From contig NIVC01000040.1 in assembly GCA_002269645.1 (NCBI GenBank), positions 620,001 to 684,000 of the forward strand: 64,000 nt of DNA. The letters are read 5' to 3'. The notes below the pieces were generated by a model, which saw only the letters and a list, made by a program, of their open reading frames with translations, made no database searches and was not told the origin of the DNA. Within the stretch, counting starts at the first letter, position 1; each line of letters opens with the position of its first letter. This DNA is from Macrostomum lignano (Eukaryota). Below are positions 17,771-63,388 of the stretch, piece by piece. The position numbers and the translations under genes are program-made.

Positions 17771-20700
17771 ATGCGCTTAACAAAGCTACTAACAGTAGCA
17801 TCATTTGCATTCTGTCTGGCCTCGCTCTGCCAGTGCCGCTACACGCCCGATTGGGCCTCGTTGGATTCGCGCCCTCTGCCCGCCTGGTACGACCAGAGTA
17901 AAATTGGCATCTTTATCCACTGGGGCGTGTTCTCGGTGCCCTCCTACCACAGCGAGTGGTTCTGGTGGTACTGGCAGGGCACGGACAAACAGAAGGACGT
18001 GGTGAACTTTATGAAACAGAATTATCCTCCCGGTTTCACCTACGCCGATTTTGCGCCAAAATTTAAAGCGACATTTTTTAATCCGGACCAATGGGCGGAG
18101 CTTTTCGACTCGGCTGGTGCGAAGTACGTCGTGTTCACTAGCAAGCATCACGAGGGCTATTGCAACTGGGATACTGCTTATAGTTTTAATTGGAACTCGG
18201 TACGTTTCAAGGTCGATTTTGTTGTATTTTCAAAAGGCCTAATTTTTCTGTCTTTTAAAGACCGAATTTCGTATCTTCAAGGCCAATTTTGCAGCGTTTT
18301 GAAGGCCGATATTCGCAGGGTTTTGAAGGCCGATATTCGCAGGGTTTTGAAGTCCGATATTCGCAGGGTTTTGAAGGCCGATTGTTGCAGGGTTTTTAAG
18401 TCCGATATTCGCAGGGTTTTTAAGGCCGATTGTTGCAGGGTTTTCAAGGCCGATTGTTGCAGGGTTTTGAAGGCCGATTATTGCAGGGTTTTGAAGGCCG
18501 ATTTTTGCCGGGTTTTGAAGGCCGAATGTTGCAGTGTTTTGAAGACCGATTGTTGCAGGGTTTTGAAGGCCGATTTTTGCCGGGTTTTGAAGGCCGATTT
18601 TTGCCGGGTTTTGAAGGCCGATTTTTGCCGGGTTTTGCAGGCTGATTTTTGCAAGGTTTTGAAGACAGATTTTTGCCGGGTTTTGAAGGCCGATTGTTGC
18701 AGTGTTTTGAAAACCGATTGTTGCAGGGTTTTGAAGGCCGATTTTTGCCGGGTTTTGAAGGCCGATTTTTGCCGGGTTTTGCAGGCCGATTTTTGCAGGG
18801 TTTTGAAGACAGATTTTTGCCGGGTTTTGCAGGCCGATTTTTGCAGGGTTTTGAAGACAGATTTTTGCCGGGTTTTGAAGGCCGATTGTTGCAGTGTTTT
18901 GAAAACCGATTGTTGCAGTGTTTTGAAAACCGATTGTTGCAGGGTTTTGAAGGCCGATTTTTGCAGGGTTTTGAAGGCCGATTTTTGCCGGGTTTTGCAG
19001 GCTGATTTTTGCAAGGTTTTGAAGACAGATTTTTGCCGGGTTTTGAAGGCCGATTGTTGCAGTGTTTTGAAAACCGATTGTTGCAGGGTTTTGAAGGCCG
19101 ATTTTTGCCGGGTTTTGAAGGCCGATTTTTGCCGGGTTTTGCAGGCCGATTTTTGCAGGGTTTTGAAGACAGATTTTTGCCGGGTTTTGAAGGCCGATTG
19201 TTGCAGTGTTTTGAAAACCGATTGTTGCAGTGTTTTGAAAACCGATTGTTGCAGGGTTTTGAAGGCCGATTTTTGCAGGGTTTTGAAGGCCGATTTTTGC
19301 CGGGTTTTGCAGACCGATTTTCGCAGGGTTTTGCAGACCGATTTTCGCAGTGTTTTGAAAACCGATTGTTGCAGGGTTTTGAAGGCCGATTTTTGCGGGG
19401 TTTTGAAGGCCGATTTTTGCCGGGTTTTGCAGGCCGATTTTTGCAGGGTTTTGAAGACAGATTTTTGCCGGGTTTTGAAGGCCGATTGTTGCAGTGTTTT
19501 GAAAACCGATTGTTGCAGTGTTTTGAAAACCGATTGTTGCAGGGTTTTGAAGGCCGATTTTTGCAGGGTTTTGAAGGCCGATTTTTGCCGGGTTTTGCAG
19601 ACCGATTTTCGCAGGGTTTTGAGGACCGATTGTTGCAGGGTTTTGAAGGCCGATTTTTGCAGGGTTTTGAAGGCCGATTTTTGCAGCGTTTTGAAGGCCG
19701 ATTTTTGCGGGGTTTTGAAGGCCGATTTTTGCGGGGTTTTGAAGGCCGATTTTTGCGACCTTTTCAAAGCCAATTCTCGCTGCATTTTAAACATTATTTT
19801 TTGTTTTACTCAAAGGGACAACTATTGAGCTATTGACCTAGAGACAATTTTAAATGCTTTGGAAGAGAAATTCTTTTAGTTAGAAGAATATTTTGTTACA
19901 TTTTTAACAAGTTGTTTATAGTTAATCGACCCCTGGTCCGATTATGCTTAAAACCTGCACTCGCAGAAGCAAGTCGGCCCCAACCGCGACCTCGTTGCTG
20001 ATTTGGCGGCCGCGATCCGGAAGCGTCCCGGCCTTCGGTTCGGCCTCTACCATTCCCTGTACGAATGGTTCAACCCGCTGTACCAGAATGACCAGCGCTC
20101 CCAGTTCAAGACCAGAGATTTTGTCCTGTCTAAAACCATGCCAGAGCTGTACGAGTTGGTTAATCGCTTCAAACCTGATGTCGTATGGAGCGATGGAGAC
20201 TGGGACGCCCCGGCGGAGTATTGGAATTCCACCGGGTTCTTAGCCTGGCTTTATAACGACAGTCCAGTCAATGATAGCGTAGTTACTAATGATCGTTGGG
20301 GCAAAGGTGTCATGTGCAATCACGGCGGTTATTACACCTGTCAGGACCGGTACAATCCGGGCATTTTGCAGCCTCATAAATGGGAGAATTGCATGACTCT
20401 GGATAAGCTGAGCTGGGGCTATCGGCGGGATGCCCGGCTGGCCGACTATCTGACGCCTCAGGAGCTGCTGAGTGAGTAGGCCTGATTGTAATTGATCATT
20501 TTAGTGCCCTGATTTGACCTCGGTATATTGACTCTTGATTTCTTGCTCTTTGAAGTCACGTGACTTAGTTTACTTTAGTTGGGTCTAACGTAACCTGCTC
20601 CGTTGACTTTGGTGTCACGTGACTGCATTCTCCATAGTTTTCTATAGTTGTGTGTGTCACGTGACCTCATAGATTGCTGTAGTTTTGTGTCACGTGACAG

Positions 20701-28148: not shown

Positions 28149-28690
28149 GGGTTTTAGCCTAGTGGTTTGAGCGTCGGAATCACGACTGAAAGGTCGCGGG
28201 TTCGATTCTCGACACACTCGAAACAATTTGTGTCCTTGAGCAAGACAGGGACTTCTGTGATATAAATTTACCATCGAACTGGTGCTGGCGCCCCTGGTGT
28301 TGGCGCCCCTGGTGCTGGCGCCCCTGGTGCTGGCGCCCCTGGTGCTGGCGCCCCTGGTGCTGGCGCCCCTGGTGCTGGCGCCCCTGGTGCTGGCGCCCCT
28401 GGTGCTGGCGCCCCTGGTGCTGGCGCCCCTGGTGCTGGCGCCCCTGGTGCTGGCGCCCCTGGTGCTGGCGCCCCTGGTGCTGGCGCCCCTGGTGCTGGCG
28501 CCCCTTGGTGCTAAAGCCCCTGGTGCTAAAGCCCCTTGTGCTAAAGCCCCTGGTGCTAAAACCCTTTGGTGCTAAAGCCCCAGTACCAAGAAAAAGGTTT
28601 GAATGGTTCTATTATTTGGTAAATTTATATCGTAGAAGTCCCTGGTAAGACACCCTAACTCTGCATTGCTTCAGTTCACCCAGCTGGGGT
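28149..28690 (+). mobile_element. tRNA-derived SINE, split by a MITE insertion
   Basis: A-box TAGCCTAGTGG and B-box GGTTCGATTC. The body ...GTGTCCTTGAGCAAGA | (GTAAGA)CACCCTAACTCTGCATTGCTTCAGTTCACCCAG is colinear with the uninterrupted copy at 52870-53000. Confidence 0.8.
28246..28644. mobile_element. ~400-bp MITE with 28-bp TIRs (CAGGG termini) carrying a 15-bp minisatellite
   Basis: Left CAGGGACTTCTGTGATATAAATTTACCA versus right reverse complement CAGGGACTTCTACGATATAAATTTACCA. Flanks GCAAGA/GTAAGA. Internal (CTGGTGCTGGCGCCC)n. Confidence 0.8.
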
Positions 28691-28991
28691 AATTAATTGA
28701 GGGTTCAGATGCTGTTTAAAATTACTAAATATTAATATCGTTTGTAAACATTATCCACGCAACTGAAAATACTGCATGCGAGAAAATCGTCTTGAACATT
28801 TAGGATGGTAAATAAATCCTCTCTTACAAATGATCGTCAGTAATATAATTATGTTTTTATTTGATGCTTTTAAGCATTGTAATTGACAATATAGAAAGTT
28901 AAGTTAAGTTAAATTGTTTCTGTTGTAATAACTAGCTAACTAAGGTCGCGTTAGCTACGTAGAACATGCATCAGCCGCTAGGACGTCATCT

Positions 28992-29652
28992 TCAACCCCG
29001 CCAGGCATTCTCAGCCGGGGTCCCATAGCAGGACGCCGGGTGCATGAAGAAGTTCCGGCAGAGTTTCGAGCGTTTCATTGCCTGTCGAAGCTCCTGACTC
29101 TTCCAGTTGGCGCTGATGCCGGCAGGAATAGGTGGCGAATTTCTCCGATACTTCGCATAGGCCCAAGCAGGAGCCGGGTGTATGAACTGGAACTCGATGA
29201 AATTTGACGTCGCAAACATTGAAGTCACTACTGATTAAACTATAATAAGAGCGACAAACGTGGAAAACTACAGTAAAAGGACGCACTTTAAGCGGCATTG
29301 TCACACAACCGGCGAGAGGCATTGCTGCCCATTCCGCCGACTCCCCCTGAGCAGGTACAAAAGCGCGCGGATGCGTTTGCAGTCATACAGGCGTTAGGCA
29401 TGTACCTATGTTGTCTCGGGGGTTGGCCCTCGAGGACGTTAATTGCACGCGCCGAGCCAAGCCTCTACCGATCTTTCTATCTTCCCATTGTCTGTTGTGC
29501 CTCATACTTATTTGGCAGTGCTATAAAGGGTTGATGTAATACGGACTTACGATGCCGAACTTGCGATCTTCGGGCAGCGCCAGAGCTTCTTGGGCAGCCA
29601 CCGCCAAGAGTCCAAGAGCGACCAGCACAACTAGAGCAAATCTGCAACTCAT
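28992..29652 (-). CDS. Secreted prepropeptide with a somatostatin/allatostatin-C-like cyclic peptide. Predicted exons 29652-29551 and 29186-28992; about 98 aa
   Basis: Signal peptide MSCRFALVVLVALGLLAVAAQEALA, perfect donor ATC|GTAAGT and acceptor TTCCAG|TTC in phase 0. Product ...EDRK-FGIFIHPAPAWAYAKY-RR-...AM-KR-SKLCRNFFMHPASCYGTPAENAWRG*. Confidence 0.65.
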
Positions 29653-29740
29653 AATTCCTATAGATGAGAGTCTGGTTGCGCCGGTGAATAGAGAATGAGT
29701 CGCTGTGAACAAGCCATTTTTAGGGCAGAAGATTTGCTAA

Positions 29741-29748
29741 TTTTTATA
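29741..29748 (-). promoter_or_regulatory. Candidate TATA box of the prepropeptide gene
   Basis: TATAAAAA on the minus strand, about 90 bp upstream of the ATG at 29652. Confidence 0.45.
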
Positions 29749-36309: not shown

Positions 36310-39300
36310 AGCACCCGAAATGTAAGTTTATCATCAATCCACCAATGTATAATATTGTCGTGCTATTGAAAGTGCAAACGCTTTACTCAACCTTTTGAAT
36401 GTTTGGTTATTTACACTGGTGTTGGGACAATGTGCAGAAACGGATCTCACTCTCACTCATACTTGTAAATTTACCCAAAATTAGCGTCAGAGCACGAGCT
36501 CTGGCCGGACCCACTTCGAACTCTGAGCGGAAGATCGCGTCTTCGTTGGGATCGACCCGTCCCCAGGCACACACAGTACTCGTACACAATACTCGTACAG
36601 TACGAATCTCCAGCCCTCTAAGAAATAACGCAGCTCACTCAACATGCTCTTGGATTCCACGAGTCCGACAGGCAAGCGAGCGACGGGCTTGGTTGCACGG
36701 AGCGCTGAGTAGTATCGTAGTTGACTGACTCAGCTGAGTGAGCTCTCGATCGTCTGAGTTTATCTGAGTATCTGAGTCTGAGTAGACTCTGTGCACCACC
36801 TTATGCTATCAAGCTCAACCCACAAATCATATAAATGGCGTGACTGTAGCGCCATTCCACTTTACTTGTCCATGAGTTTGAGCATGAGCAGTTCTCTCTC
36901 TTATTCGCTTTCGTTTAACCGATCTTTGCTTTTAAATTTCAGTTAAACTGCTCGGTTGCTACCATCATCCCATGGCCGCATGGATGATCGACCCCTTTAT
37001 GTTAAGAAGCGATTCAATGACAATTGAGATGTGCCAAAACCACTGCTATATGATTACGAATCTCCTTTTTGGAGTAGCAAGACGAACAGACTGTCATTGT
37101 GGTCAGACAATAGAACTGAATAAAGTTCCGGCAAAGAAATGTCATTACAGGTGTCCGGGAAATCCAAAGCAGATCTGCGGTGGTCGCGACTGGGTAGTTG
37201 TGTACGAGCAGCCCGCTTCGCTCCCAACAGCCTCTGTTGGTGAGAATAATTTAATTAATCTTTGTTTCTCAACGCCTCCCCCCTAACCCTGAACCCAACC
37301 CAAAATTTAACCCTGACGAAAGCCCAAACTCTAACGCAAAAGTCACTAATGGTTGAACCCTAACTGAAATTGCTGACATTCTCTTGTCAAGGCTCATGGG
37401 AGTGTTGCTCAAATGCTTGAAGCCGAAGCTCATGGATGATGTCTACATGTACGCATGTGCATGTTCTTTGTTGCGTCCACAGCGGATGTGGCAAGATTGC
37501 CATCACGAGGGGCTTTCCCAGATTTTCCCTTTCCCAGAGTAAGCACCACTTCTCCCAGAGTATAGCACCACTTCTCCCAGAGTATAGCACCACTTCTCCC
37601 AGAGTATAGCACCACTTCTCCCAGAGTATAGCACCACTTCCCCAGATTACCGCAGTTCCAGAAAACTTCTAAGTTTACGGTTTACTTCTAATTTAAATAT
37701 TAAACACATTATTGTCGACTTTGACCTGAATAAATGGGTGGATGGATGGATTCATGGGTGCGTTGAATGATTAGATGTATTAATAGATGGATGGATGGAT
37801 GGATAGATGGATGGATGGATGGATGGATGGATGGATGGATGGATGGATGGATGGATGGATGGATGGATGGATGGATGGATGGATGGATGGATGGATGGAT
37901 GGATGGATGGATGGATGGATGGATGGATGGATGGATGGATGGATGGATGGATGGATGGATGGATGGATGGATGGATGGATGGATGGATGGATGGATGGAT
38001 GGATGGATGGATGGATGGATGGATGGATGGATGGATGGATGGATGGATGGATGGATGGATGGATGGATGGATGGATGGATGGATGGATGGATGGATGGAT
38101 GGATGGATGGATGGATGGATGGATGGATGGATGGATGGATGGATGGATGGATGGATGGATGGATGGATGGATGGATGGATGGATGGATGGATGGATGGAT
38201 GGATGGATGGATGGATGGATGGATGGATGGATGGATGGATGGATGGATGGATGGATGGATGGATGGATGGATGGATGGATGGATGGATGGATGGATGGAT
38301 GGATGGATGGATGGATGGATGGATGGATGGATGGATGGATGGATGGATGGATGGATGGATGGATGGATGGATGGATGGATGGATGGATGGATGGATGGAT
38401 GGATGGATGGATGGATGGATGGATGGATGGATGGATGGATGGATGGATGGATGGATGGATGGATGGATGGATGGATGGATGGATGGATGGATGGATGGAT
38501 GGATGGATGGATGGATGGATGGATGGATGGATGGATGGATGGATGGATGGATGGATGGATGGATGGATGGATGGATGGATGGATGGATGGATGGATGGAT
38601 GGATGGATGGATGGATGGATGGATGGATGGATGGATGGATGGATGGATGGATGGATGGATGGATGGATGGATGGATGGATGGATGGATGGATGGATGGAT
38701 GGATGGATGGATGGATGGATGGATGGATGGATGGATGGATGGATGGATGGATGGATGGATGGATGGATGGATGGATGGATGGATGGATGGATGGATGGAT
38801 GGATGGATGGATGGATGGATGGATGGATGGATGGATGGATGGATGGATGGATGGATGGATGGATGGATGGATGGATGGATGGATGGATGGATGGATGGAT
38901 GGATGGATGGATGGATGGATGGATGGATGGATGGATGGATGGATGGATGGATGGATGGATGGATGGATGGATGGATGGATGGATGGATGGATGGATGGAT
39001 GGATGGATGGATGGATGGATGGATGGATGGATGGATGGATGGATGGATGGATGGATGGATGGATGGATGGATGGATGGATGGATGGATGGATGGATGGAT
39101 GGATGGATGGATGGATGGATGGATGGATGGATGGATGGATGGATGGATGGATGGATGGATGGATGGATGGATGGATGGATGGATGGATGGATGGATGGAT
39201 GGATGGATGGATGGATGGATGGATGGATGGATGGATGGATGGATGGATGGATGGATGGATGGATGGATGGATGGATGGATGGATGGATGGATGGATGGAT

Positions 39301-42300
39301 GGATGGATGGATGGATGGATGGATGGATGGATGGATGGATGGATGAATTGCGGCATTAAACTGCAACCGACAGTCAAATTGTGGCAGTCTATTGGAGCTG
39401 ACAGTGAAATTAGAAAAGATTGTCTCAGCTCATTTTCTGACCTGCTATTGACGTGTAAATTCATTTATTTGACATCTATAAATGAAATAGCTTTTTGTCA
39501 TTGTTTATTTTAACGCCAGTAAATTTCCATCTCTTGTTGCAGAGCACCCGAAATGTAAGTTCATCATCAATCTACCAATATATAATAATAATTTCCTTGA
39601 TTGTATTTACACTGTACAGTGCAAAAGCTTTACTCAACCTTTTGAATTATCGGTAAATTTTCACTGTTGTTGAGACAATGGCAGAACGGATCTCACTCTC
39701 ACTCCTAAATTGACCCACTGAGCGTCAGAGCAAGAGCTCAAGGTGCCTTCGGTCCTCTGGCCGGACCCACTTCGAAATCTGAGCAGAAGTTCGCATTTTC
39801 TTAGGGATGACTAATAATGCGGTTCCAGTGAAGTATCAATATATAGGCTTCTCGCTTGGAGCGGCCTTTGGTTTCCGGCTGCTCTTCTATCAGAAACCTT
39901 AGTAGCGTAGTAAGTAGTGCTGCCAACAGTTCCTTCGGGTCTCAGCCTTCGGTGAGGTGAGGATCCCGTCGGAACGAAGTAAACAAGACGAGCGAACACA
40001 GCACTTCAGGCGGATTTGCGATTTCAAAATAATGGTAAGCAGATCCTGCCGGGCTCAGTAGGTCGGCTGGGAGGGCGGTGTCAGTTTCCGAGCAGCCTCT
40101 CAGAGGTCAGGGTTTAGGATTGGACAGGCAAGCCAGTATCAAGTGGTATAAATGCACACGGGCGGGAAATTAGAATGAACAGAATTGAAGAACTGACAAG
40201 CTAGAGACTCCTTGACAGAACCAAAGGCGAGAGGGTTCGTATTTAAAAGGCAGAAAACAATTGCACCATTACGCGCGAGACCACGATTGCGTCAGATTGC
40301 ATGATGCGCTGTTGCTATTTTTAGCAACTGACGCTATAGGGTTGCCTTAGAGAAAGCAATTGGTTCCAAGGGGGCGTGATTTCTGCCATAAACACGGACC
40401 AATTGCACAGTGAGTTATATTCACTGCACTTCGGACTTTCGAGAGAAAACAGCCTATATAGGGCCCGTTCTATAAAACTTTCGTAAGTTCCGTCGTACGA
40501 TCCAACTTACGCACGAGAGTTGAGAACCGCCTCAGAACGTTCTTAAGTGCGTTCGGTGAAACTTTCGCAGATGCGTCGTAACTTACGCAGTAGCTGCGAT
40601 CAAACTTAAGAATTCACGCCTGACTTTTGCCTCTGCCAGTGGTCTTTTTGGAACTGATTTTACCGTAATTGGAACCTAGCTTGTAAAAAACACACGTTGC
40701 ACTCTTAAATTAAAGTAAGACAAAATCATGCTCATTTATCCATTACCATTACAAGCAATATGAGCCATGACCATTTTGTCACATGTCGATTCCACTGTTG
40801 TATTTAGGCACATTAAAAAAACATTCAAACAAGGGTGCTTTATTCATTCGCATATACAAATAAGACCTAGCGAATTGCTTAATTACATTCCTAGTGCCAT
40901 TTTGACACATCACATGTCATGTGATGTCATGCCATGACAAAACTATCGTCAGTCTTTCCTGCTCAACGCGTAGACGTTCCGTCTCAATCTTCAGCCTCTC
41001 TCTCTCGACAAACAATCTGTCGTTTTCAACTTCCAATCGAGCTTCCTCCACCCGAAGACGTTTTATTTCTAAGCTTTCGATCAGCCCAAGTTTGCTCTGC
41101 TTTCGCTGACGCTTCGTGTTCTTGGCAGTGGCGTTGGCAACAGACTCTTCGCTTTTTTCGTCGTCAGCTGTCTCGTACTCAGGCGATGCGCTTCTGCCAA
41201 CTGCTTCGGAAAATTCTTCAGCAGGCGCACTTGCGATATCAATGTACTTGGCCGCCGAGCTTGGTGCTGCACTGTTGGATTTAGGCAGCTGCAGCGTGTC
41301 AACACCCCGTGGCACGCCTTCCACGACCTGTTTTCGGATGGACTGCGCCGCCTTCTCCTCTAAACTCGACAGCTGTGGGGCCTGCGATGGACCGCCTGCC
41401 TGTCTTAGCTTGCTCCTTGCGGATGCTGGCTACTTTGTGCTTCAGTTGACTCTTGAAGTCGGACCACCGCTTTCGGCAGTTCTCTCCAGAACGTCCTTGT
41501 CCACCGACTGCATTCAAGATATCGGCAATTTGCTGCCATTCGCTTTTTTGCGAAAATTCGCTTCGACAGTATTCGCAGGTAATTTTTCCGTTCGGTCGTT
41601 GCTTCTTGCAGCGTCTCCAGTTCCGCCGCTGACCAGTTCGCCGCGCGTTTTTGTGCTGCGTTAGAATTCATTGCATTCCAATTATTTGGCACTTTCGCCC
41701 GTATCAGCTTCTCTTTATGCTGTTATACGAGCTATACGAGCGTAATTGCCACTCTACTTAAATATCGATTGGTCAAGGCTGTTTGCAACTCTTCGACCGC
41801 AAGATCAATTATGTGATGCGAACGTATATTTGAGGAGCAATTATCAGGTCGGCCTGATAAGACGGTCAGCCAGTCACAGTATAGGGGACATAAAGTTAAG
41901 GATAATTAGAGTGGTTTGACACCGGGCCCTCTTATAACTTACTTAATTAACCAATAAAATCTATTATCTAATTATCTACTTGAAGCAACTTATGCTTCAA
42001 GAACTTAGCGCTGAAATTCCCCATCGGATTGCTAACTCACTTGCAATTGCCAAAGTCAGATCCGAGAATGAATTTTCTGGGCATCGCATTATTCGCTCAG
42101 CATGCTTTGAGAACTGAGAGAAGGTTTCGAGACAGACTTGACCCTCTCGACTTCAGCAATCGGGAAATTTTCGAGCGGTACCGTCTGCCACGTCAACCTT
42201 TGCTGGAGCTCATTGAGTTGCTGCGGCCGCAACTACAACGTCAGACGCGTCGCAACAGAGCGATTTCCGTCGAACTGCAGGTTTGCCTTGCCCTCCGATT

Positions 42301-45300: not shown

Positions 45301-47878
45301 ACCCCAATTTTTGTTGTTTTCTTAGAATTCTAGCCTAAAGCTGCCATGTACATTTCAGTTGCTGGCTAATATACATTAGTACTAAACCAATTAATAAGTT
45401 ATGTAAACCTGCAAGCTTGGGCTTCTAAACTTATTAAAGTCATTTCAGTTGCCTTTTTATAAAATAGCTTATGTATTCTTTTTTGCTACTGAACTGAAAG
45501 TGGAAAGCTGTTTTGATAAGTATATTTACCTGAGTAGCCTATCTAGTTATTTTAGAATCTATGGGGTGCACCGACCCCGACTACAACTGACAGTGCGATT
45601 AGCGACTGTAGCGCCTTCTACTTTACTTGTCCATGAGTTCGAGCATGAGCAGTTCGCTCTCTTATTCGATTTTGTTTAATTATACGAATTAAAATTTCAG
45701 TTAAACTGAAAGGTTGCTACTATGATGGCACTAGCGTATATAATTTGGGACGTACTGTGTTTGTCACCAGCGAGTCAATGACAATTGATAGCTGTCAGAA
45801 AAGCTGCAATCTCACTACTAATCCCTACTTTGGAGTAGCAAGAGGAACAGAATGCTTCTGTGGCAAAAAGATACATCATATGAAAAATGATCTACACTAT
45901 TGTCATAGGAGATGTCCGGGAAACCCAACGCAGATCTGCGGTGGTAAAGACTTGATGATTGTGTACGAGCAGCCCGCTGCACTCGTTAAAACCTCTATTG
46001 GTGAGAATATTATAATAATGTTAATGTCTGGAGTTGATCGTGCACGTGCAGAGCGATTTAAATTCGTCAGTTGCTTGTTTTAATTTACGCGTGTCTACTT
46101 TTTGTAGAAAGCATAGCTTCAAAAAGTTGAATACCCCTAAAATACCTCCACGAATTAGATAGGAACCATCCATCCACCATCCAGCAAGCATCTACCAAAA
46201 GCAAACCGACATAGTTGTTGGAGAGCCAACGAAGAATGCAACAAAAGATCGAACAAAAAACATGTAGCTTCTGACCTCTGAGTCTTGACACCTCAGCAAT
46301 TCCTCCCGTAAGCCTTGACTTTCCAGCAATTCCCCCTATAGGTCACAGCATTGTAGCAGTTGCCCCCGAGGATGGATGGATGGATGGATGGATGGATGGA
46401 TGGATGGATGGATGGATGGATGGATGGATGGATGGATGAATGGATGGATGGATGGATGGATGGATGGATGGATGGATGGATGGATGGATGGATGGATGGA
46501 TGGATGGATGGATGGATGGATGGATGGATGGATGGATGGATGGATGGATGGATGGATGGATGGATGGATGGATGGATGGATGGATGAATGGATGGATGGA
46601 TGAATGGATGGATGGATGGATGGATGGATGGATGGATGGATGAATGGATGGATGGATGGATGGATGGATGGATGGATGGATGGATGGATGGATGGATGGA
46701 TGGATGGATGGATGGATGAATGGATGGATGGATGGATGGATGAATGGATGGATGGATGGATGGATGGATGGATGGATGGATGGATGGATGGATGGATGGA
46801 TGGATGGATGGATGGATGGATGGATGGCTGGATGGTTGGTTGAAAGTGATAGTAAACTGCAGCCGACAGTCAAATTGTGGCATTCCATTGCAGCTGACAG
46901 TCAAATCAAACAGATTGTAATTTCACCAAGATTTGAGCACTATACTGATCAGTAGCCGACCTGCTATTGACATGTATGGTAATTCTGAAATACCTATTAT
47001 CCATTTTAAATTTCACCCGAGTAAATTACTGTCTCTTGTTGCAGAGCACCCGAAATGTAAGTTCATCATCAATCTACCAATGTATGACTATAATTTCCTT
47101 CATGGTATTTAAAGTGCAAAATCTTTACTCAACCTTTGAATTTTTAATAAATTTAAACTTGTGTGCGACAATGGCAGAAACAGACCTCACTGTAACTCAT
47201 AAATTTACCCAATTAATGAGCGTCAGAGCAAGAGCTCAAGGTGCCTTCGGTCCTCTGGCCACTTCCAACTCTGAGCGGAAGATCGCGTCTTCGTTGGGAT
47301 CGACCCGTCCCCAGGCAGACACAGTACAGTACGAATCTCCAGCCCTCTAAGAAATAACGCAGCTCACTCAGCATGCTCTTGGATTCCACGAGTCCGACAG
47401 GCAAGCGAGCGACGGGCTTGGTTGCACGGAGCGCTGAGTAGTATCGTAGTTGACTGACTCAGCTGAGTGAGCTCTCGATCGTCTGAGTTTATCTGAGTAT
47501 CTGAGTCTGAGTAGACTCTACGCACCACCTCAATACACAACCTCGACCTCAACACAAAAATGTTTAACCCTTTGCATTAAAACTTCAGTTAAACTGGAGG
47601 GTTGCTTTTTTGTTGCCGAGCAGCCAGACAACCGCTACATCAGATCATCCAGCGAGTCAATGACAATAGACAGATGCTACGAGGACTGCATTGACTTAGT
47701 TTATCGCGAGAGGCCCACGTACTTTGGAGTTGAAAATAGAACACGTTGCATTTGCCAGTTTACTGTAATGTCCACGAATAATGTTTATTTAAAATATTGC
47801 GATAACAAATGTCCTGGAGATCCGAAACAGATCTGCGGTGGACCTCGGCTCGCGGTGGTGTACGAGCATCCGAAATAA
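36310..47878 (+). CDS. Tandem three-WSC-domain (carbohydrate-binding) protein, 5' exon not found. WSC exons 36943-37239, 45701-46000, 47589-47878; putative 12-nt microexons 36310-36321, 39543-39554, 47045-47056
   Basis: Each large exon has the 8-Cys WSC pattern (GCY/F...SMTI..C...C..FGV....C.CG...C...CPG.P.QICGG....VYE.P). All junctions are phase 1 (TTTCAG/CTTCAG|TTAAACTG ... G|GTGAGA). The last exon ends in TAA. Confidence 0.8.
37540..37645. repeat. 22-bp minisatellite
   Basis: CACTTCTCCCAGAGTATAGCAC, about 5 copies. Confidence 0.9.
37787..39346. repeat. (GGAT)n microsatellite, about 1.55 kb and essentially perfect
   Basis: About 390 GGAT units. It explains the spurious MDGW/HPSI ORFs. Confidence 0.98.
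40917..41671 (-). pseudogene. Harbinger Myb/SANT-like DNA-binding protein with a C-terminal coiled coil; at least 2 frameshifts
   Basis: [14 protein letters not shown] ... [30 protein letters not shown] ... KTG(G)GP ... [30 protein letters not shown], spread over three frames. Confidence 0.85.
42068..43107 (+). pseudogene. Harbinger (HARBI1-like) DDE transposase with a single 1-bp frameshift at about 42508
   Basis: [17 protein letters not shown](I)[61 protein letters not shown] and CVLHN. Confidence 0.92.
44580..44752. repeat. 35-bp minisatellite
   Basis: TTCACATCCAGCATGTAAATACCTGACTG(G/T)ACGGC, 5 copies. Confidence 0.9.
46371..46830. repeat. (GGAT)n microsatellite, paralogous to 37787-39346
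   Basis: Interrupted by GAAT variants. Followed by the same flank (TAAACTGCA.CCGACAGTCAAATTGTGGCA) as the first array. Confidence 0.97.
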
Positions 47879-51552: not shown

Positions 51553-52737
51553 ATGGCATCCCGACCGCATGCCTCTCAGATCGCTAATCAATCAATGCTC
51601 CGCAAACCAAGGCAATCCATGCTCCCCAGTGTCTGGAGCAGAGCAGCAAAGCGGTACACCATGTTCGCCTTCTGGTACAAGCACTTCACCAAGCTCCTTG
51701 GAGTCGTGTTCGCCGCGGGCCTGCTGGGCAACGCTGCAGTGCTCATTGCTGCGGTGACTCAGAAAACGGCGCACAAGGTGATCAACGTCTACCTGGCTAA
51801 CCTGGCTGTGGCCGACCTGCTCCATCTCGTCTCCATTGTGCCGCTCATCCGCCTAGCAACCGTGAACAGCTGGCTGTGGGGAACGGCCCTGTGCAAGATG
51901 AACTACATGATTCACTACATGTAGTAGTGGACCGCCAGCATCTTCATCATCACCGCTCTGGGATTCGATCGCTTCGTTGCCGTGGCGATGCCTGGGCGCT
52001 CCGGCAGCCTCCGCAACCGCCGGTTCGCCTGGGGCCTCACGCTGGGCCTGTGGATCCTGAGCGGCCTCCTCGTGAGCCCCATCGGGTTCCTCACCAGCGT
52101 CACAGCCAATGCGTGGCTGCTGAACGCCACGGACTTGAAGGTCCTCTACAGCTGCGGCCACTTTGCGCAGAAGCTCAACCGCTCCGACGCCTTCTTAGAC
52201 GTCCTTCAGAGCCTCGTGCAGGACCCGATGATCTTCTCGGCTTGCGCCTTCACCGTCGGGTTCGCCGTGCCACTCCTCCTGCTCGCGGTGTTCTACGGTA
52301 TGCTCATCAGGAAGCTGCTCAACCAGTCTCAGGCCACAACTGCTGGCGCCCAGGCCGCTCAGAGGCGCTTTGGCCGCGTGACCCTCATGGTGGCGGCTGT
52401 GATCCTGCTGTACACCGTCTGCACCCTGCCGCACTGGATCCACGTGGCGCTGAACTTGGCGGGGGTCATCAAATCGTACCGAGTCCTGTGGCTCACGTCG
52501 CACTGCTCAACTCTGCTGGGCTACCTGAACAGCGCCTGCAATCCCGTGCTGTACGCCTGGTACAACAAGCCGTTCCGCCAGGGCCTGAGCCGCTGCCTGC
52601 CGCAGCGCTGGTTTGACCGGCTGAATCGCAACGACAACCATCGGCAGGCGGACGACCGACCTCGCGGCAGAGCTCCTGGTCAGCAACAACATCTGGAGGT
52701 CGCTCTGATGAATATGGAAGCTGCTGCCGCTGTGTAA
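51553..52737 (+). pseudogene. Intronless class A peptide GPCR (allatostatin-C/somatostatin/opioid-receptor-like) interrupted by TAG-TAG at 51922-51927
   Basis: GLLGN, NVYLANLAVADLL, WLWGTALCK, DRFVAV, RVTLMV..LPHWIHVAL and LGYLNSACNPVLY. All seven TMs are in one frame; the only lesion is two stops in TM3. Confidence 0.85.

Positions 52738-54139: not shown

Positions 54140-63388
<9,249 letters not shown>

What the first reader, a model, noticed from the sequence alone, without database searches (positions are those of the whole stretch)
28992..29652. Hidden two-exon neuropeptide precursor whose Cys ring looks intermediate between somatostatin and allatostatin-C
Seen in sequence: a signal-peptide exon ends at a perfect GTAAGT donor (29550). 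Splicing it in phase 0 to the TTCCAG acceptor at 29187 gives signal-LPEDRK|FGIFIHPAPAWAYAKY|RR|spacer|KR|SKLCRNFFMHPASCYGTPAENAWR-G*. The splice creates IFIHPA, which parallels FFMHPA in the second peptide and supports the join. Established: somatostatin is [14 protein letters not shown], allatostatin-C rings are CYFNPISC, and the two families are orthologous. This ring starts like somatostatin (CRNFF), ends like AstC (HPASC), and has an intermediate size of 9 residues between the Cys. The terminal Gly suggests amidation. The ORF track splits the gene into two unremarkable ORFs. Inference: a lineage-specific SST/AstC-type prohormone that also carries a linear sibling peptide.
Basis: partly seen in the sequence, partly recalled or inferred. 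Interest (0 to 1): 0.85.

Follow-up and report, generated by a model that had tools for sequence, protein, structure and literature searches.

The report
Orphan flatworm Cys-loop peptide precursor gene
This is a small two-exon gene of the flatworm Macrostomum lignano, already in UniProt as an uncharacterised protein, that most likely makes a secreted, disulfide-looped, amidated signalling peptide, but the peptide fails the defining tests for somatostatin, allatostatin-C, elevenin and luqin, so it is an orphan candidate hormone and not a demonstrated link between families.

Summary
On the minus strand, ATG 29652, a GTAAGT donor (29550) and a TTCCAG acceptor (29187) give a phase-0 splice and a 98-aa signal-peptide protein. 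It ends in KR-SKLCRNFFMHPASCYGTPAENAWR-G-stop. The gene is not "hidden": the spliced product is 100% identical to UniProt A0A1I8H222 (M. lignano, uncharacterised). A second genomic copy (A0A1I8IT71) uses the same junction.

The layout fits a prohormone and matches the general SS/ASTC precursor plan: signal peptide, phase-0 intron in the pro-region, and one C-terminal Cys-loop peptide after KR, with a terminal Gly.

Family membership fails on published criteria:
- No WK motif (SS-type).
- The loop is 9 residues, not 6 (ASTC) or 8 (elevenin).
- The peptide is not next to the signal peptide (elevenin).
- There is no RF/RY/RW-amide peptide (luqin).

Profile scores lie far below every true elevenin or AstC. 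The ring resembles vertebrate SS-14 (K/R-N-F-F), Platynereis elevenin (F-H-P-S-C) and arthropod AstC. It resembles spiralian AstC and invertebrate SS-type peptides only at chance level, which argues against an "intermediate" orthologue. The "IFIHPA/FFMHPA" parallel is lost in the second copy. Expression and conservation could not be tested, because the databases lack Macrostomum transcriptomes.

The parts
29741..29748 (-). TATA box (TATAAAAA), about 90 nt upstream of the start codon
   Evidence: Sequence read; position. The promoter role is inferred from position only.
29653..29720 (-). Probable 5' UTR. It holds an out-of-frame upstream ATG (29716) opening a 19-codon uORF that stops 4 nt before the main ATG.
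   Evidence: In the second copy (P0002) this upstream ATG is in frame and gives a 17-aa N-terminal extension. The two copies differ here by frame-shifting indels, which is the behaviour of non-coding sequence.
29551..29652 (-). Exon 1 coding part (codons 1-34): signal peptide (codons 1-25, 29578-29652), LPEDRK, and the first three residues (FGI) of the linear peptide
   Evidence: The n-region is MSCR, the h-region is FALVVLVALGLLAVAA, and Ala sits at -3 and -1 (ALA|LP), read by inspection with the von Heijne -3/-1 rule. Identical to UniProt A0A1I8H222.
29187..29550 (-). Intron, 364 nt, GTAAGT...TTCCAG, phase 0, lying in the pro-region nine residues after the predicted signal cleavage site
   Evidence: The same junction is used in both UniProt models. 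GC is 0.49 against 0.57-0.58 for the exons. An alternative in-frame acceptor 6 nt upstream (29193) would add Phe-Gln.
28992..29186 (-). Exon 2 coding part (codons 35-98 plus the TGA stop)
29148..29186 (-). Exon-2 portion of the putative linear peptide FGIFIHPAPAWAYAKY (residues 32-47; the first three codons are at 29551-29559). It is flanked by RK (30-31) and RR (48-49, 29142-29147).
   Evidence: The peptide is not conserved between the two copies (FGIFIPAPARAYAKY in P0002). No Gly follows it, so it would not be amidated. Cleavage at RK is uncertain (own knowledge of convertase preferences).
29070..29075 (-). Lys72-Arg73 dibasic processing site immediately upstream of the Cys-loop peptide
   Evidence: Cleavage is inferred, not shown.
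28998..29069 (-). Predicted mature peptide SKLCRNFFMHPASCYGTPAENAWR (residues 74-97). Cys77 is at 29058-29060 and Cys87 at 29028-29030, with a 9-residue loop.
   Evidence: The sequence is identical in both M. lignano copies. The disulfide is inferred.
28995..28997 (-). Gly98, the last codon before the stop and a candidate amide donor (giving ...AWR-NH2)
   Evidence: Amidation is inferred from the general mechanism of peptidylglycine alpha-amidating monooxygenase.
28856..28861 (-). AATAAA polyadenylation signal, about 130 nt after the stop codon

Best explanation
A genuine, compact gene of about 0.9 kb in Macrostomum lignano (TATA box, two exons, AATAAA) encodes a 98-aa prepropeptide. Proposed mechanism:
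- The signal peptide (residues 1-25) directs it into the secretory pathway.
- A prohormone convertase cuts after Lys72-Arg73, and possibly at Arg48-Arg49 and Arg30-Lys31.
- The C-terminal Gly98 is converted to an amide.
- Cys77 and Cys87 form a disulfide.
The product would be a 24-residue looped peptide, SKLC(RNFFMHPAS)CYGTPAENAWR-NH2, that acts as a neuropeptide or hormone, most probably on a rhodopsin-type GPCR.

[quoted passage not shown] The peptide does not meet the defining features of SS, ASTC, elevenin or luqin. It is best treated as an orphan Cys-loop peptide, either lineage-specific or too diverged to assign.

Shown: the gene anatomy, identity to an annotated model, the second copy, and the family tests. 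Inferred: expression, processing, disulfide, amidation, neuronal origin and receptor.
For: Gene anatomy and coordinates. The identical 98-aa product is UniProt A0A1I8H222 from M. lignano. The second copy, A0A1I8IT71, keeps the junction and is identical over the last 51 residues, including KR, both Cys and the terminal Gly. Canonical intron type for this genome. The SS/ASTC precursor plan (C-terminal loop peptide, common phase-0 pro-region intron) is described by Koch 2022. The Aplysia AstC precursor likewise carries an extra linear peptide that does not activate AstC-R. The orphan status rests on four results: no homologue at E<=1e-3 among 1.84 billion representatives, none among 5.8 billion by word search, no Pfam family, and no paper printing the motif.
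Against: There is no transcript, peptide or expression data. The databases lack M. lignano and close Macrostomum transcriptomes (calibration), so neither the splice nor conservation in other species is independently verified. The UniProt models are predictions. Only two nearly identical copies exist, so purifying selection on the loop cannot be shown: three differences all fall in the N-terminal half, which has roughly a 0.1 chance of happening at random. A signal peptide plus KR plus a terminal Gly would also fit a non-neuronal secreted peptide.
Confidence: 0.6

Rival explanations
1. The finder's reading: this is the platyhelminth orthologue of the SS/ASTC-type peptides, with a diverged and expanded 9-residue loop, signalling through an SST/opioid/AstC-type receptor.
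For: The precursor plan matches: a C-terminal loop peptide after KR and a phase-0 pro-region intron. The ring start R-N-F-F matches vertebrate SS-14 K-N-F-F (Cys-anchored score reached by 6/20000 ring shuffles). Like all 16 published AstCs, it has [A/S]-C-aromatic at the second Cys. Asn is present in the loop. A divergent GPCR whose best solved-structure matches are opioid/SST receptors lies 22 kb away, so that receptor lineage probably exists in this species.
Against: The WK motif shared by all SS-type peptides is absent, and protostome SS-like loops have 4 residues. Protostome ASTC loops always have 6 residues. The Cys-anchored AstC profile gives +3.6 bits, against at least 11.4 for every true member. 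Resemblance to spiralian AstCs (Platynereis, Aplysia) and to echinoderm SS-type and ASTC-type peptides is at chance. The matching KNFF is a chordate feature not shared by invertebrate SS-type peptides. The nearby GPCR is disabled by two stop codons, and linkage of ligand and receptor genes is not expected.
Confidence: 0.17
2. It is a diverged elevenin-type peptide.
For: The ring's C-terminal half and tail, F-M-H-P-A-S-C-Y-G, parallel Platynereis elevenin F-V-F-H-P-S-C-R-G (3/20000 random rings and 190/20000 shuffles reach the score). The conserved elevenin Pro and Gly are present.
Against: All 38 distinct published elevenins have exactly 8 loop residues and C-[R/L]-G; here the loop is 9 and the motif is C-Y-G. 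Elevenin follows the signal peptide directly in a precursor of about 150 aa; here the peptide is at the C-terminus of a 98-aa precursor. The conserved Asp before Cys1 is absent. The profile score is -9.4 bits, against at least 11.6 for true members.
Confidence: 0.07
3. It is a secreted peptide that is not a neuropeptide, for example a gland, seminal-fluid, antimicrobial or defensive product that happens to carry basic sites.
For: Only generic secretory features have been demonstrated. The gene has no family assignment. There are no expression data.
Against: The combination of KR directly before a short Cys loop, a terminal Gly and a very small precursor is typical of regulated-pathway prohormones. 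This rests on established knowledge and was not tested here.
Confidence: 0.12
4. It is not a functional gene, and the model is a prediction artefact.
For: Both UniProt entries are computational predictions, and no transcript could be retrieved.
Against: Several independent signals coincide: TATA box, ATG, signal peptide, consensus donor and acceptor in phase, exon/intron GC contrast, AATAAA, and a second copy with the same reading frame kept open.
Confidence: 0.04

Closest known systems
Allatostatin-C-type precursors (protostomes), e.g. Platynereis pQPVQCLVNIVSCW-NH2, Drosophila pQVRYRQCYFNPISCF
   Same: Small precursor. Single disulfide-loop peptide at the C-terminal end after a dibasic site. 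Phase-0 intron in the pro-region. [A/S]-Cys-aromatic at the second Cys. Asn in the loop. The Aplysia precursor also has an additional linear peptide.
   Different: The loop is 9 residues, not the invariant 6. There is no F-x-P motif or aliphatic-rich loop. An 11-residue C-terminal tail ends in Arg-amide. The ring shows no above-chance similarity to spiralian AstCs, and the profile score is far below that of true members.
Somatostatin/cortistatin (chordates), [14 protein letters not shown]. From memory and not tested: human cortistatin-17 contains CRNFFWK.
   Same: C-[K/R]-N-F-F at the start of the loop. ...S-C at its end. C-terminal position in the precursor. A single phase-0 intron.
   Different: It lacks the Trp-Lys pharmacophore that defines the whole SS-type family, having M-H-P instead. 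The loop is 9 residues, not 10. It has a long amidated tail. The matching KNFF is not shared by invertebrate SS-type peptides (ArSS2, protostome C-x-W-K-x-C).
Elevenin (L11), e.g. Platynereis PDCTRFVFHPSCRGVAA
   Same: Aromatic-x-H-P-x-S-C-x-G in the second half of the loop. A disulfide loop of similar size. A short tail after the loop.
   Different: The loop is 9 residues, not the invariant 8. It has Tyr in place of the conserved Arg after Cys2 and no Asp before Cys1. The peptide is at the C-terminus of the precursor, not immediately after the signal peptide.
Luqin/RYamide precursors
   Same: A peptide close to the signal peptide plus a Cys pair near the C-terminus.
   Different: There is no amidated R[F/Y/W] peptide (AKY is followed by RR with no Gly) and no WRPQ motif. 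The Cys spacing is 9, not 10. A KR site directly precedes the Cys region.

Membership tests
Generic regulated-pathway prohormone | N-terminal signal peptide | tested here: met
   MSCR + FALVVLVALGLLAVAA + QEALA|LP, with Ala at -3 and -1 (read by inspection, as no SignalP was available).
Generic regulated-pathway prohormone | Dibasic cleavage site(s) flanking the candidate peptide, and a C-terminal Gly for amidation | tested here: met
   KR72-73 sits before SKLC..., Gly98 is the last residue, and RR48-49 and RK30-31 are also present. Actual processing is not testable here.
Generic regulated-pathway prohormone | Expression in neurons or endocrine cells and a detectable mature peptide | not testable with these tools
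   No M. lignano transcriptome or peptidome is accessible.
Somatostatin-type (SS/CST/UII/SSRP-like) | Trp-Lys (WK) motif inside the Cys loop | tested here: not met
   The loop is RNFFMHPAS. [quoted passage not shown]
Somatostatin-type (SS/CST/UII/SSRP-like) | Loop size of 10-15 residues (SS/CST, echinoderm SS2) or 4 residues (UII/URP, protostome SSRP-like) | tested here: not met
   9 residues; criterion.
Somatostatin-type (SS/CST/UII/SSRP-like) | Loop peptide at the C-terminus of the precursor, and a phase-0 intron in the pro-region | tested here: met
   The feature is shared with ASTC and does not discriminate between the two.
Somatostatin-type (SS/CST/UII/SSRP-like) | Ring similarity to invertebrate members of the family | tested here: not met
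   Against ArSS2, 5808/20000 shuffles score as well. Only vertebrate SS-14 scores high (6/20000).
Allatostatin-C-type | Exactly six residues between the Cys (invariant in protostomes) | tested here: not met
   9 residues here. All 16 distinct published AstCs have 6, and Koch 2022 states the same.
Allatostatin-C-type | Loop content: Asn, often F-x-P, and an aliphatic or aromatic first loop residue | tested here: inconclusive
   Asn is present but at loop position 2. The motif is M-H-P (F-x-x-P), not F-x-P. The first loop residue is Arg. The Cys-anchored profile gives +3.6 bits against a leave-one-out minimum of 11.4, and 1.9% of shuffles do as well.
Allatostatin-C-type | Aromatic residue immediately after the second Cys | tested here: met
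   C-Y here; Y, F or W in all 16 reference peptides.
Allatostatin-C-type | Activates an AstC/SST-type receptor | not testable with these tools
   Requires a receptor assay.
Elevenin | Two Cys separated by exactly 8 residues | tested here: not met
   9 residues here; 38 of 38 distinct published elevenins have 8.
Elevenin | C-[R/L]-G after the second Cys, Asp/Asn before the first Cys, and a conserved F..P in the loop | tested here: not met
   Here it is C-Y-G (Gly kept, Arg lost), with Leu before Cys1; Pro is present. The profile gives -9.4 bits against a leave-one-out minimum of 11.6. HMMER finds no match.
Elevenin | Peptide located directly after the signal peptide in a precursor of about 150 aa | tested here: not met
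   The peptide occupies residues 74-97 of 98; criterion.
Luqin/RYamide | N-terminal peptide ending in amidated R-F/Y/W (WRPQGRF-like in spiralians) | tested here: not met
   ...AWAYAKY is followed by RR without Gly; criterion.
Luqin/RYamide | C-terminal Cys pair spaced by 10 residues | tested here: not met
   The spacing is 9; criterion, which notes that C. elegans has 8.

The most novel reading that the evidence does not exclude
The peptide is the missing platyhelminth representative of the SS/ASTC superfamily: a form with an expanded 9-residue loop that keeps an SS-like loop start and an AstC/elevenin-like Pro-x-Ser-Cys-aromatic end. It would signal through the divergent SST/opioid-leaning GPCR family, of which a recently disabled copy lies 22 kb away in the same window. 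Flatworms are absent from both recent analyses of SS/ASTC evolution, so such a member would bear on whether the two families are paralogues.
Probability: 0.15. Interest if true: 0.65.

Novelty: new member of a known kind. Interest (0 to 1): 0.4.

Why it matters
Flatworm peptide signalling is poorly mapped. Surveys report far more orphan peptide GPCRs than known ligands (Zamanian 2011). No flatworm sequences were included in the two studies that reopened the question of the somatostatin/allatostatin-C relationship. A concrete, synthesisable 24-residue looped amidated peptide from the genetically tractable flatworm M. lignano gives a direct test: deorphanise it against the worm's SST/AstC-type and elevenin-type receptors. 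If it pairs with one of them, it extends that family's known structural range, since the loop size was thought invariant in ASTC and elevenin. If it pairs with neither, it defines a new lineage-specific peptide system. As it stands it is an uncharacterised predicted protein with a plausible function, not a demonstrated evolutionary intermediate.

Tried and rejected
1. Homologue searches. Word-indexed search of 5.8 billion proteins, exhaustive phmmer over 1.84 billion representatives, Pfam, the metagenome contig scan and exact-protein contig look-ups found nothing beyond the two M. lignano entries. The calibration with the window's fucosidase exon found no hit at 90% identity or above (best full-length matches 55%, best partial match 72%). 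This shows the collections lack Macrostomum data, so the negative result says nothing about conservation or expression.

2. HMMER profiles of elevenin and AstC. They are too stiff to accommodate the ring-size difference. I replaced them with Cys-anchored PSSMs that allow free residue skipping and used matched shuffles.

3. Luqin-type precursor. Rejected because the luqin peptide itself is absent.

4. Synteny as used by Zhang 2022. It works at chromosome scale and cannot be applied to 64 kb.

5. Flatworm neuropeptide catalogues. McVeigh 2009 and Koziol 2016 are not held. Collins 2010 mentions no somatostatin or allatostatin. A full-text search for NFFMHP, FMHPASC, HPASCYG and FFMHPA returned no papers.

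6. The TAG-TAG in the neighbouring GPCR as a micro-intron. Rejected: a 7-nt GTAGTAG cannot be an intron, and a relative has a sense codon at that position.

7. Alternative splice combinations. Many open combinations exist mechanically, but only 29550/29187 joins two consensus sites, and both UniProt models use it. The acceptor at 29193 is a possible minor alternative that would add Phe-Gln.

Full report
**What is in the sequence.** The minus strand at 28992-29652 reads exactly as the finder described.
- The ATG at 29652 opens a 34-codon exon encoding MSCRFALVVLVALGLLAVAAQEALALPEDRKFGI.
- That exon is followed by GTAAGT (first intron base 29550).
- The 364-nt intron ends TTCCAG at 29187.
- The second exon continues in phase 0 with FIHPAPAWAYAKYRRNSPPIPAGISANWKSQELRQAMKRSKLCRNFFMHPASCYGTPAENAWRG and a TGA stop at 28994-28992.
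- The 98-aa product has an n/h/c signal peptide with Ala at -3 and -1 (predicted cleavage A25|L26).
- It has basic pairs at 30-31 (RK), 48-49 (RR) and 72-73 (KR).
- Two Cys (77 and 87) enclose nine residues, and Gly is the last residue.
- The mechanical ORF list does split the gene into 63-aa and 78-aa ORFs.

**Is it a gene?** The window is Macrostomum lignano DNA. The spliced product is 100% identical over its full length to UniProt A0A1I8H222, 'Uncharacterized protein', M. lignano. So the two-exon model is already annotated and is not hidden.

Its 90% cluster holds one more protein, A0A1I8IT71 (115 aa). This is evidently a second genomic copy. It keeps the same exon junction (KFGI|FI) and is identical from Tyr47 to Gly98. 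It differs by V8L in the signal peptide, loss of His37 and W42R. It also carries a 17-residue N-terminal extension that starts from an upstream ATG. In this window that ATG (29716) is out of frame and forms a 19-codon uORF. The two copies therefore differ by frame-shifting indels upstream of MSCRF, as expected for a UTR.

Local signals agree with a compact transcription unit:
- TATAAAAA at 29748, about 90 nt before the ATG.
- AATAAA at 28861, about 130 nt after the stop.
- Exon GC of 0.57-0.58 and GC3 of 0.62, against 0.49 for the intron and 0.34-0.39 for the flanks.
- A single copy in the window.

The fucosidase gene in the same window uses GTGAGT...CCCCCCACAG introns, so the proposed splice sites are typical for this genome. 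I could not obtain transcript evidence. Exact-protein look-ups found no contigs. A calibration with the window's fucosidase exon found no hit at 90% identity or above; the best full-length matches were 55% and the best partial match 72%. The collections therefore lack M. lignano and close relatives. This means the absence of homologues in the 5.8-billion word search, the exhaustive 1.84-billion HMMER search and the metagenome scan says nothing either way about expression or conservation.

**Most likely mechanism.** The protein has the hallmarks of a regulated-pathway prohormone. The inferred steps are:
- Signal-peptide removal.
- Convertase cleavage after KR73, and perhaps at RR49 and RK31.
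- Amidation using Gly98.
- A Cys77-Cys87 disulfide.

The product would be SKLCRNFFMHPASCYGTPAENAWR-NH2, 24 residues with a 9-residue loop. All of these steps are inferred, and none can be shown with these tools.

The putative linear peptide FGIFIHPAPAWAYAKY is weaker. It has no amidation signal, and its N-terminal RK site is of a type that is less reliably cleaved (own knowledge). The hexamer parallel IFIHPA/FFMHPA is unusual in this copy (BLOSUM62 score 26, reached by 4 of 20000 shuffles of the pro-region). It is destroyed in the second copy, which reads FGIFIPAPARAY (best score 13). FIHPA also lies entirely in exon 2, so the parallel gives little support to the splice. For comparison, the Aplysia AstC precursor also contains an extra linear amidated peptide, which did not activate the AstC receptor (PMC8786951).

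**Which family?** I took the defining features from the literature, not from memory.

*SS-type.* Koch et al. 2022 (PMC9048919) state that all SS-type and SSRP-like peptides share a WK motif in the loop. Protostome SSRP-like loops have four residues, and SS/CST/echinoderm SS2 loops have 10-15. This loop is RNFFMHPAS: no WK, and nine residues.

[quoted passage not shown] All 16 distinct published AstCs have six residues. This loop has nine. Asn is at position 2, and the motif is M-H-P. The [A/S]-C-aromatic ending is shared.

*Elevenin.* All 38 distinct published peptides have eight loop residues followed by C-[R/L]-G. The peptide follows the signal peptide directly in a precursor of about 150 aa. 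Here the loop has nine residues, the motif is C-Y-G, and the peptide sits at the C-terminus of a 98-aa precursor.

*Luqin.* The family needs an N-terminal amidated R[F/Y/W] peptide and a C-x10-C pair (PMC7041311). Neither is present.

**Quantitative tests.** HMMER profiles built from the published sets do not match the peptide. Cys-anchored position-specific scoring let the 9-residue ring drop whichever residues fit best:

| Family | M. lignano peptide | Leave-one-out minimum for true members | Shuffles scoring as well |
|---|---|---|---|
| Elevenin | -9.4 bits | 11.6 bits | 1.0% |
| AstC | +3.6 bits | 11.4 bits | 1.9% |

The resemblance is weak and similar to both families, and it falls far short of membership in either.

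Pairwise Cys-anchored ring comparisons:

| Reference ring | Ring shuffles scoring as well (of 20000) | Random rings scoring as well (of 20000) |
|---|---|---|
| Vertebrate SS-14 | 6 | 12 |
| Platynereis elevenin | 190 | 3 |
| Aplysia elevenin | 1072 | 133 |
| Drosophila AstC | 894 | 52 |
| Platynereis AstC | 8213 | 11765 |
| Aplysia AstC | 10216 | 5679 |
| Echinoderm ArSS2 (SS-type) | 5808 | 7841 |
| Echinoderm ArSS1 (ASTC-type) | 14890 | 9902 |

The SS-14 match comes entirely from K/R-N-F-F plus the final Ser. The SS-like part (KNFF) is a chordate feature that invertebrate SS-type peptides lack, while the residues that define the family (WK) are missing. The AstC-like part matches arthropods but not the spiralian relatives of a flatworm.

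This pattern is what convergence or chance on a short, aromatic-rich loop would give. It is not what an orthologue 'intermediate' between the families would give. The premise that SS and ASTC are orthologous is also contested. Zhang et al. 2022 (PMC8851493) and Koch et al. 2022 both argue that they are paralogous families coexisting in several phyla.

What does fit the SS/ASTC group is the precursor plan: a single loop peptide at the extreme C-terminus after a dibasic site, and a phase-0 intron in the pro-region. Koch et al. report that intron as the one gene-structure feature common to all SS, SSRP-like and ASTC genes. That is a resemblance in organisation, it is not discriminating, and it is not proof of homology.

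**Verdict on the interpretation.** The prohormone reading is the best explanation (confidence about 0.6). SS/ASTC orthology is possible but unproven (about 0.17). Elevenin affinity is less likely (about 0.07). A non-neuronal secreted peptide (about 0.12) or a spurious model (about 0.04) remain. No searchable paper prints this peptide, and none of the SS/ASTC papers includes flatworms. So the functional proposal appears to be new, although the gene model is not.

**Context and a side observation.** The window also carries these genes:
- A TLC-domain gene (about 4.9-6.4 kb).
- An alpha-L-fucosidase (17.8-21.6 kb).
- A HEM4-domain exon (about 26 kb).
- A WSC-domain exon (about 45.7 kb).
- A receptor tyrosine kinase on the minus strand (about 54.1-60.5 kb).

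It also contains very large micro- and minisatellites.

At 51553-52737 (+) there is a single-exon rhodopsin-type GPCR (7tm_1, E=2e-40). Its 394-codon frame is intact except for two adjacent stops (TAG TAG, 51922-51927) in TM3. Its closest relative reads HYI-NWTASIF where the window has HYM**WTASIF, so this copy is a recent pseudogene or a null allele.

Its best solved-structure matches are mu and kappa opioid, SSTR1/4/2 and nociceptin receptors (110-97 bits), ahead of GALR1 (96 bits). Genuine AstA-type receptors place galanin receptors about 29-34 bits ahead of opioid/SST receptors. The window's receptor therefore leans towards the SST/opioid/AstC-type branch, which earlier flatworm GPCR surveys did not report. 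It is too divergent to assign without a phylogeny.

This is weak circumstantial support that an SS/ASTC-type ligand could exist in M. lignano. It does not link this receptor to this peptide.

Noticed in passing
window 51553-52737 (+): Single-exon rhodopsin-family GPCR whose 394-codon frame is intact except for two adjacent in-frame stops (TAG TAG, 51922-51927) in TM3. A 42%-identical relative has a sense codon there, so this copy is a recent pseudogene or null allele. Its best solved-structure matches are opioid/somatostatin/nociceptin receptors, ahead of galanin receptors, unlike genuine AstA receptors. It lies 22 kb from the peptide gene.
   Followed up: partly
window 29657-29716 (-): An upstream out-of-frame ATG opens a 19-codon uORF (MACSQRLILYSPAQPDSHL*) that ends 4 nt before the main start codon. 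In the second M. lignano copy the same ATG is in frame, and the UniProt model (115 aa) begins there, which would bury the signal peptide. That is probably a mis-set start.
   Followed up: partly
window 29187-29194 (-): Two in-frame AG acceptors 6 nt apart (cgAG|ttccAG|). Using the upstream one would insert Phe-Gln between Ile34 and Phe35. Both annotated models use the downstream site.
   Followed up: no
window 18279-19756 (+): A 24-bp minisatellite (about 62 copies) in the first intron of the alpha-L-fucosidase gene stays open in several frames. It fuses with exon 1 into an artefactual 685-aa ORF.
   Followed up: no
window 37734-39345, 46370-46839 and 56014-56578: Very long tetranucleotide arrays: (ATGG)n of about 403 copies, (GGAT)n of about 118 copies, and (CAGA)n of about 141 copies. 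The last lies inside the receptor tyrosine kinase gene region on the minus strand. All of them create long spurious ORFs.
   Followed up: no
window 28279-28557 and 60543-61163: The same 15-bp minisatellite unit (CTGGTGCTGGCGCCC and its rotation CGCCCCTGGTGCTGG) occurs just 3' of the peptide gene and again 32 kb away. This suggests a dispersed satellite family.
   Followed up: no
window 54140-60516 (-): Multi-exon receptor tyrosine kinase: the kinase C-lobe hits PK_Tyr_Ser-Thr at E=2.5e-29, and an upstream extracellular exon has a weak fn3 hit. It was not characterised further.
   Followed up: partly
databases: The window's fucosidase exon finds no protein at 90% identity or above in the 5.8-billion-protein collection (best full-length matches 55%, best partial match 72%). 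M. lignano proteins are therefore only patchily represented there, and negative searches for this genome should be read with caution.
   Followed up: yes
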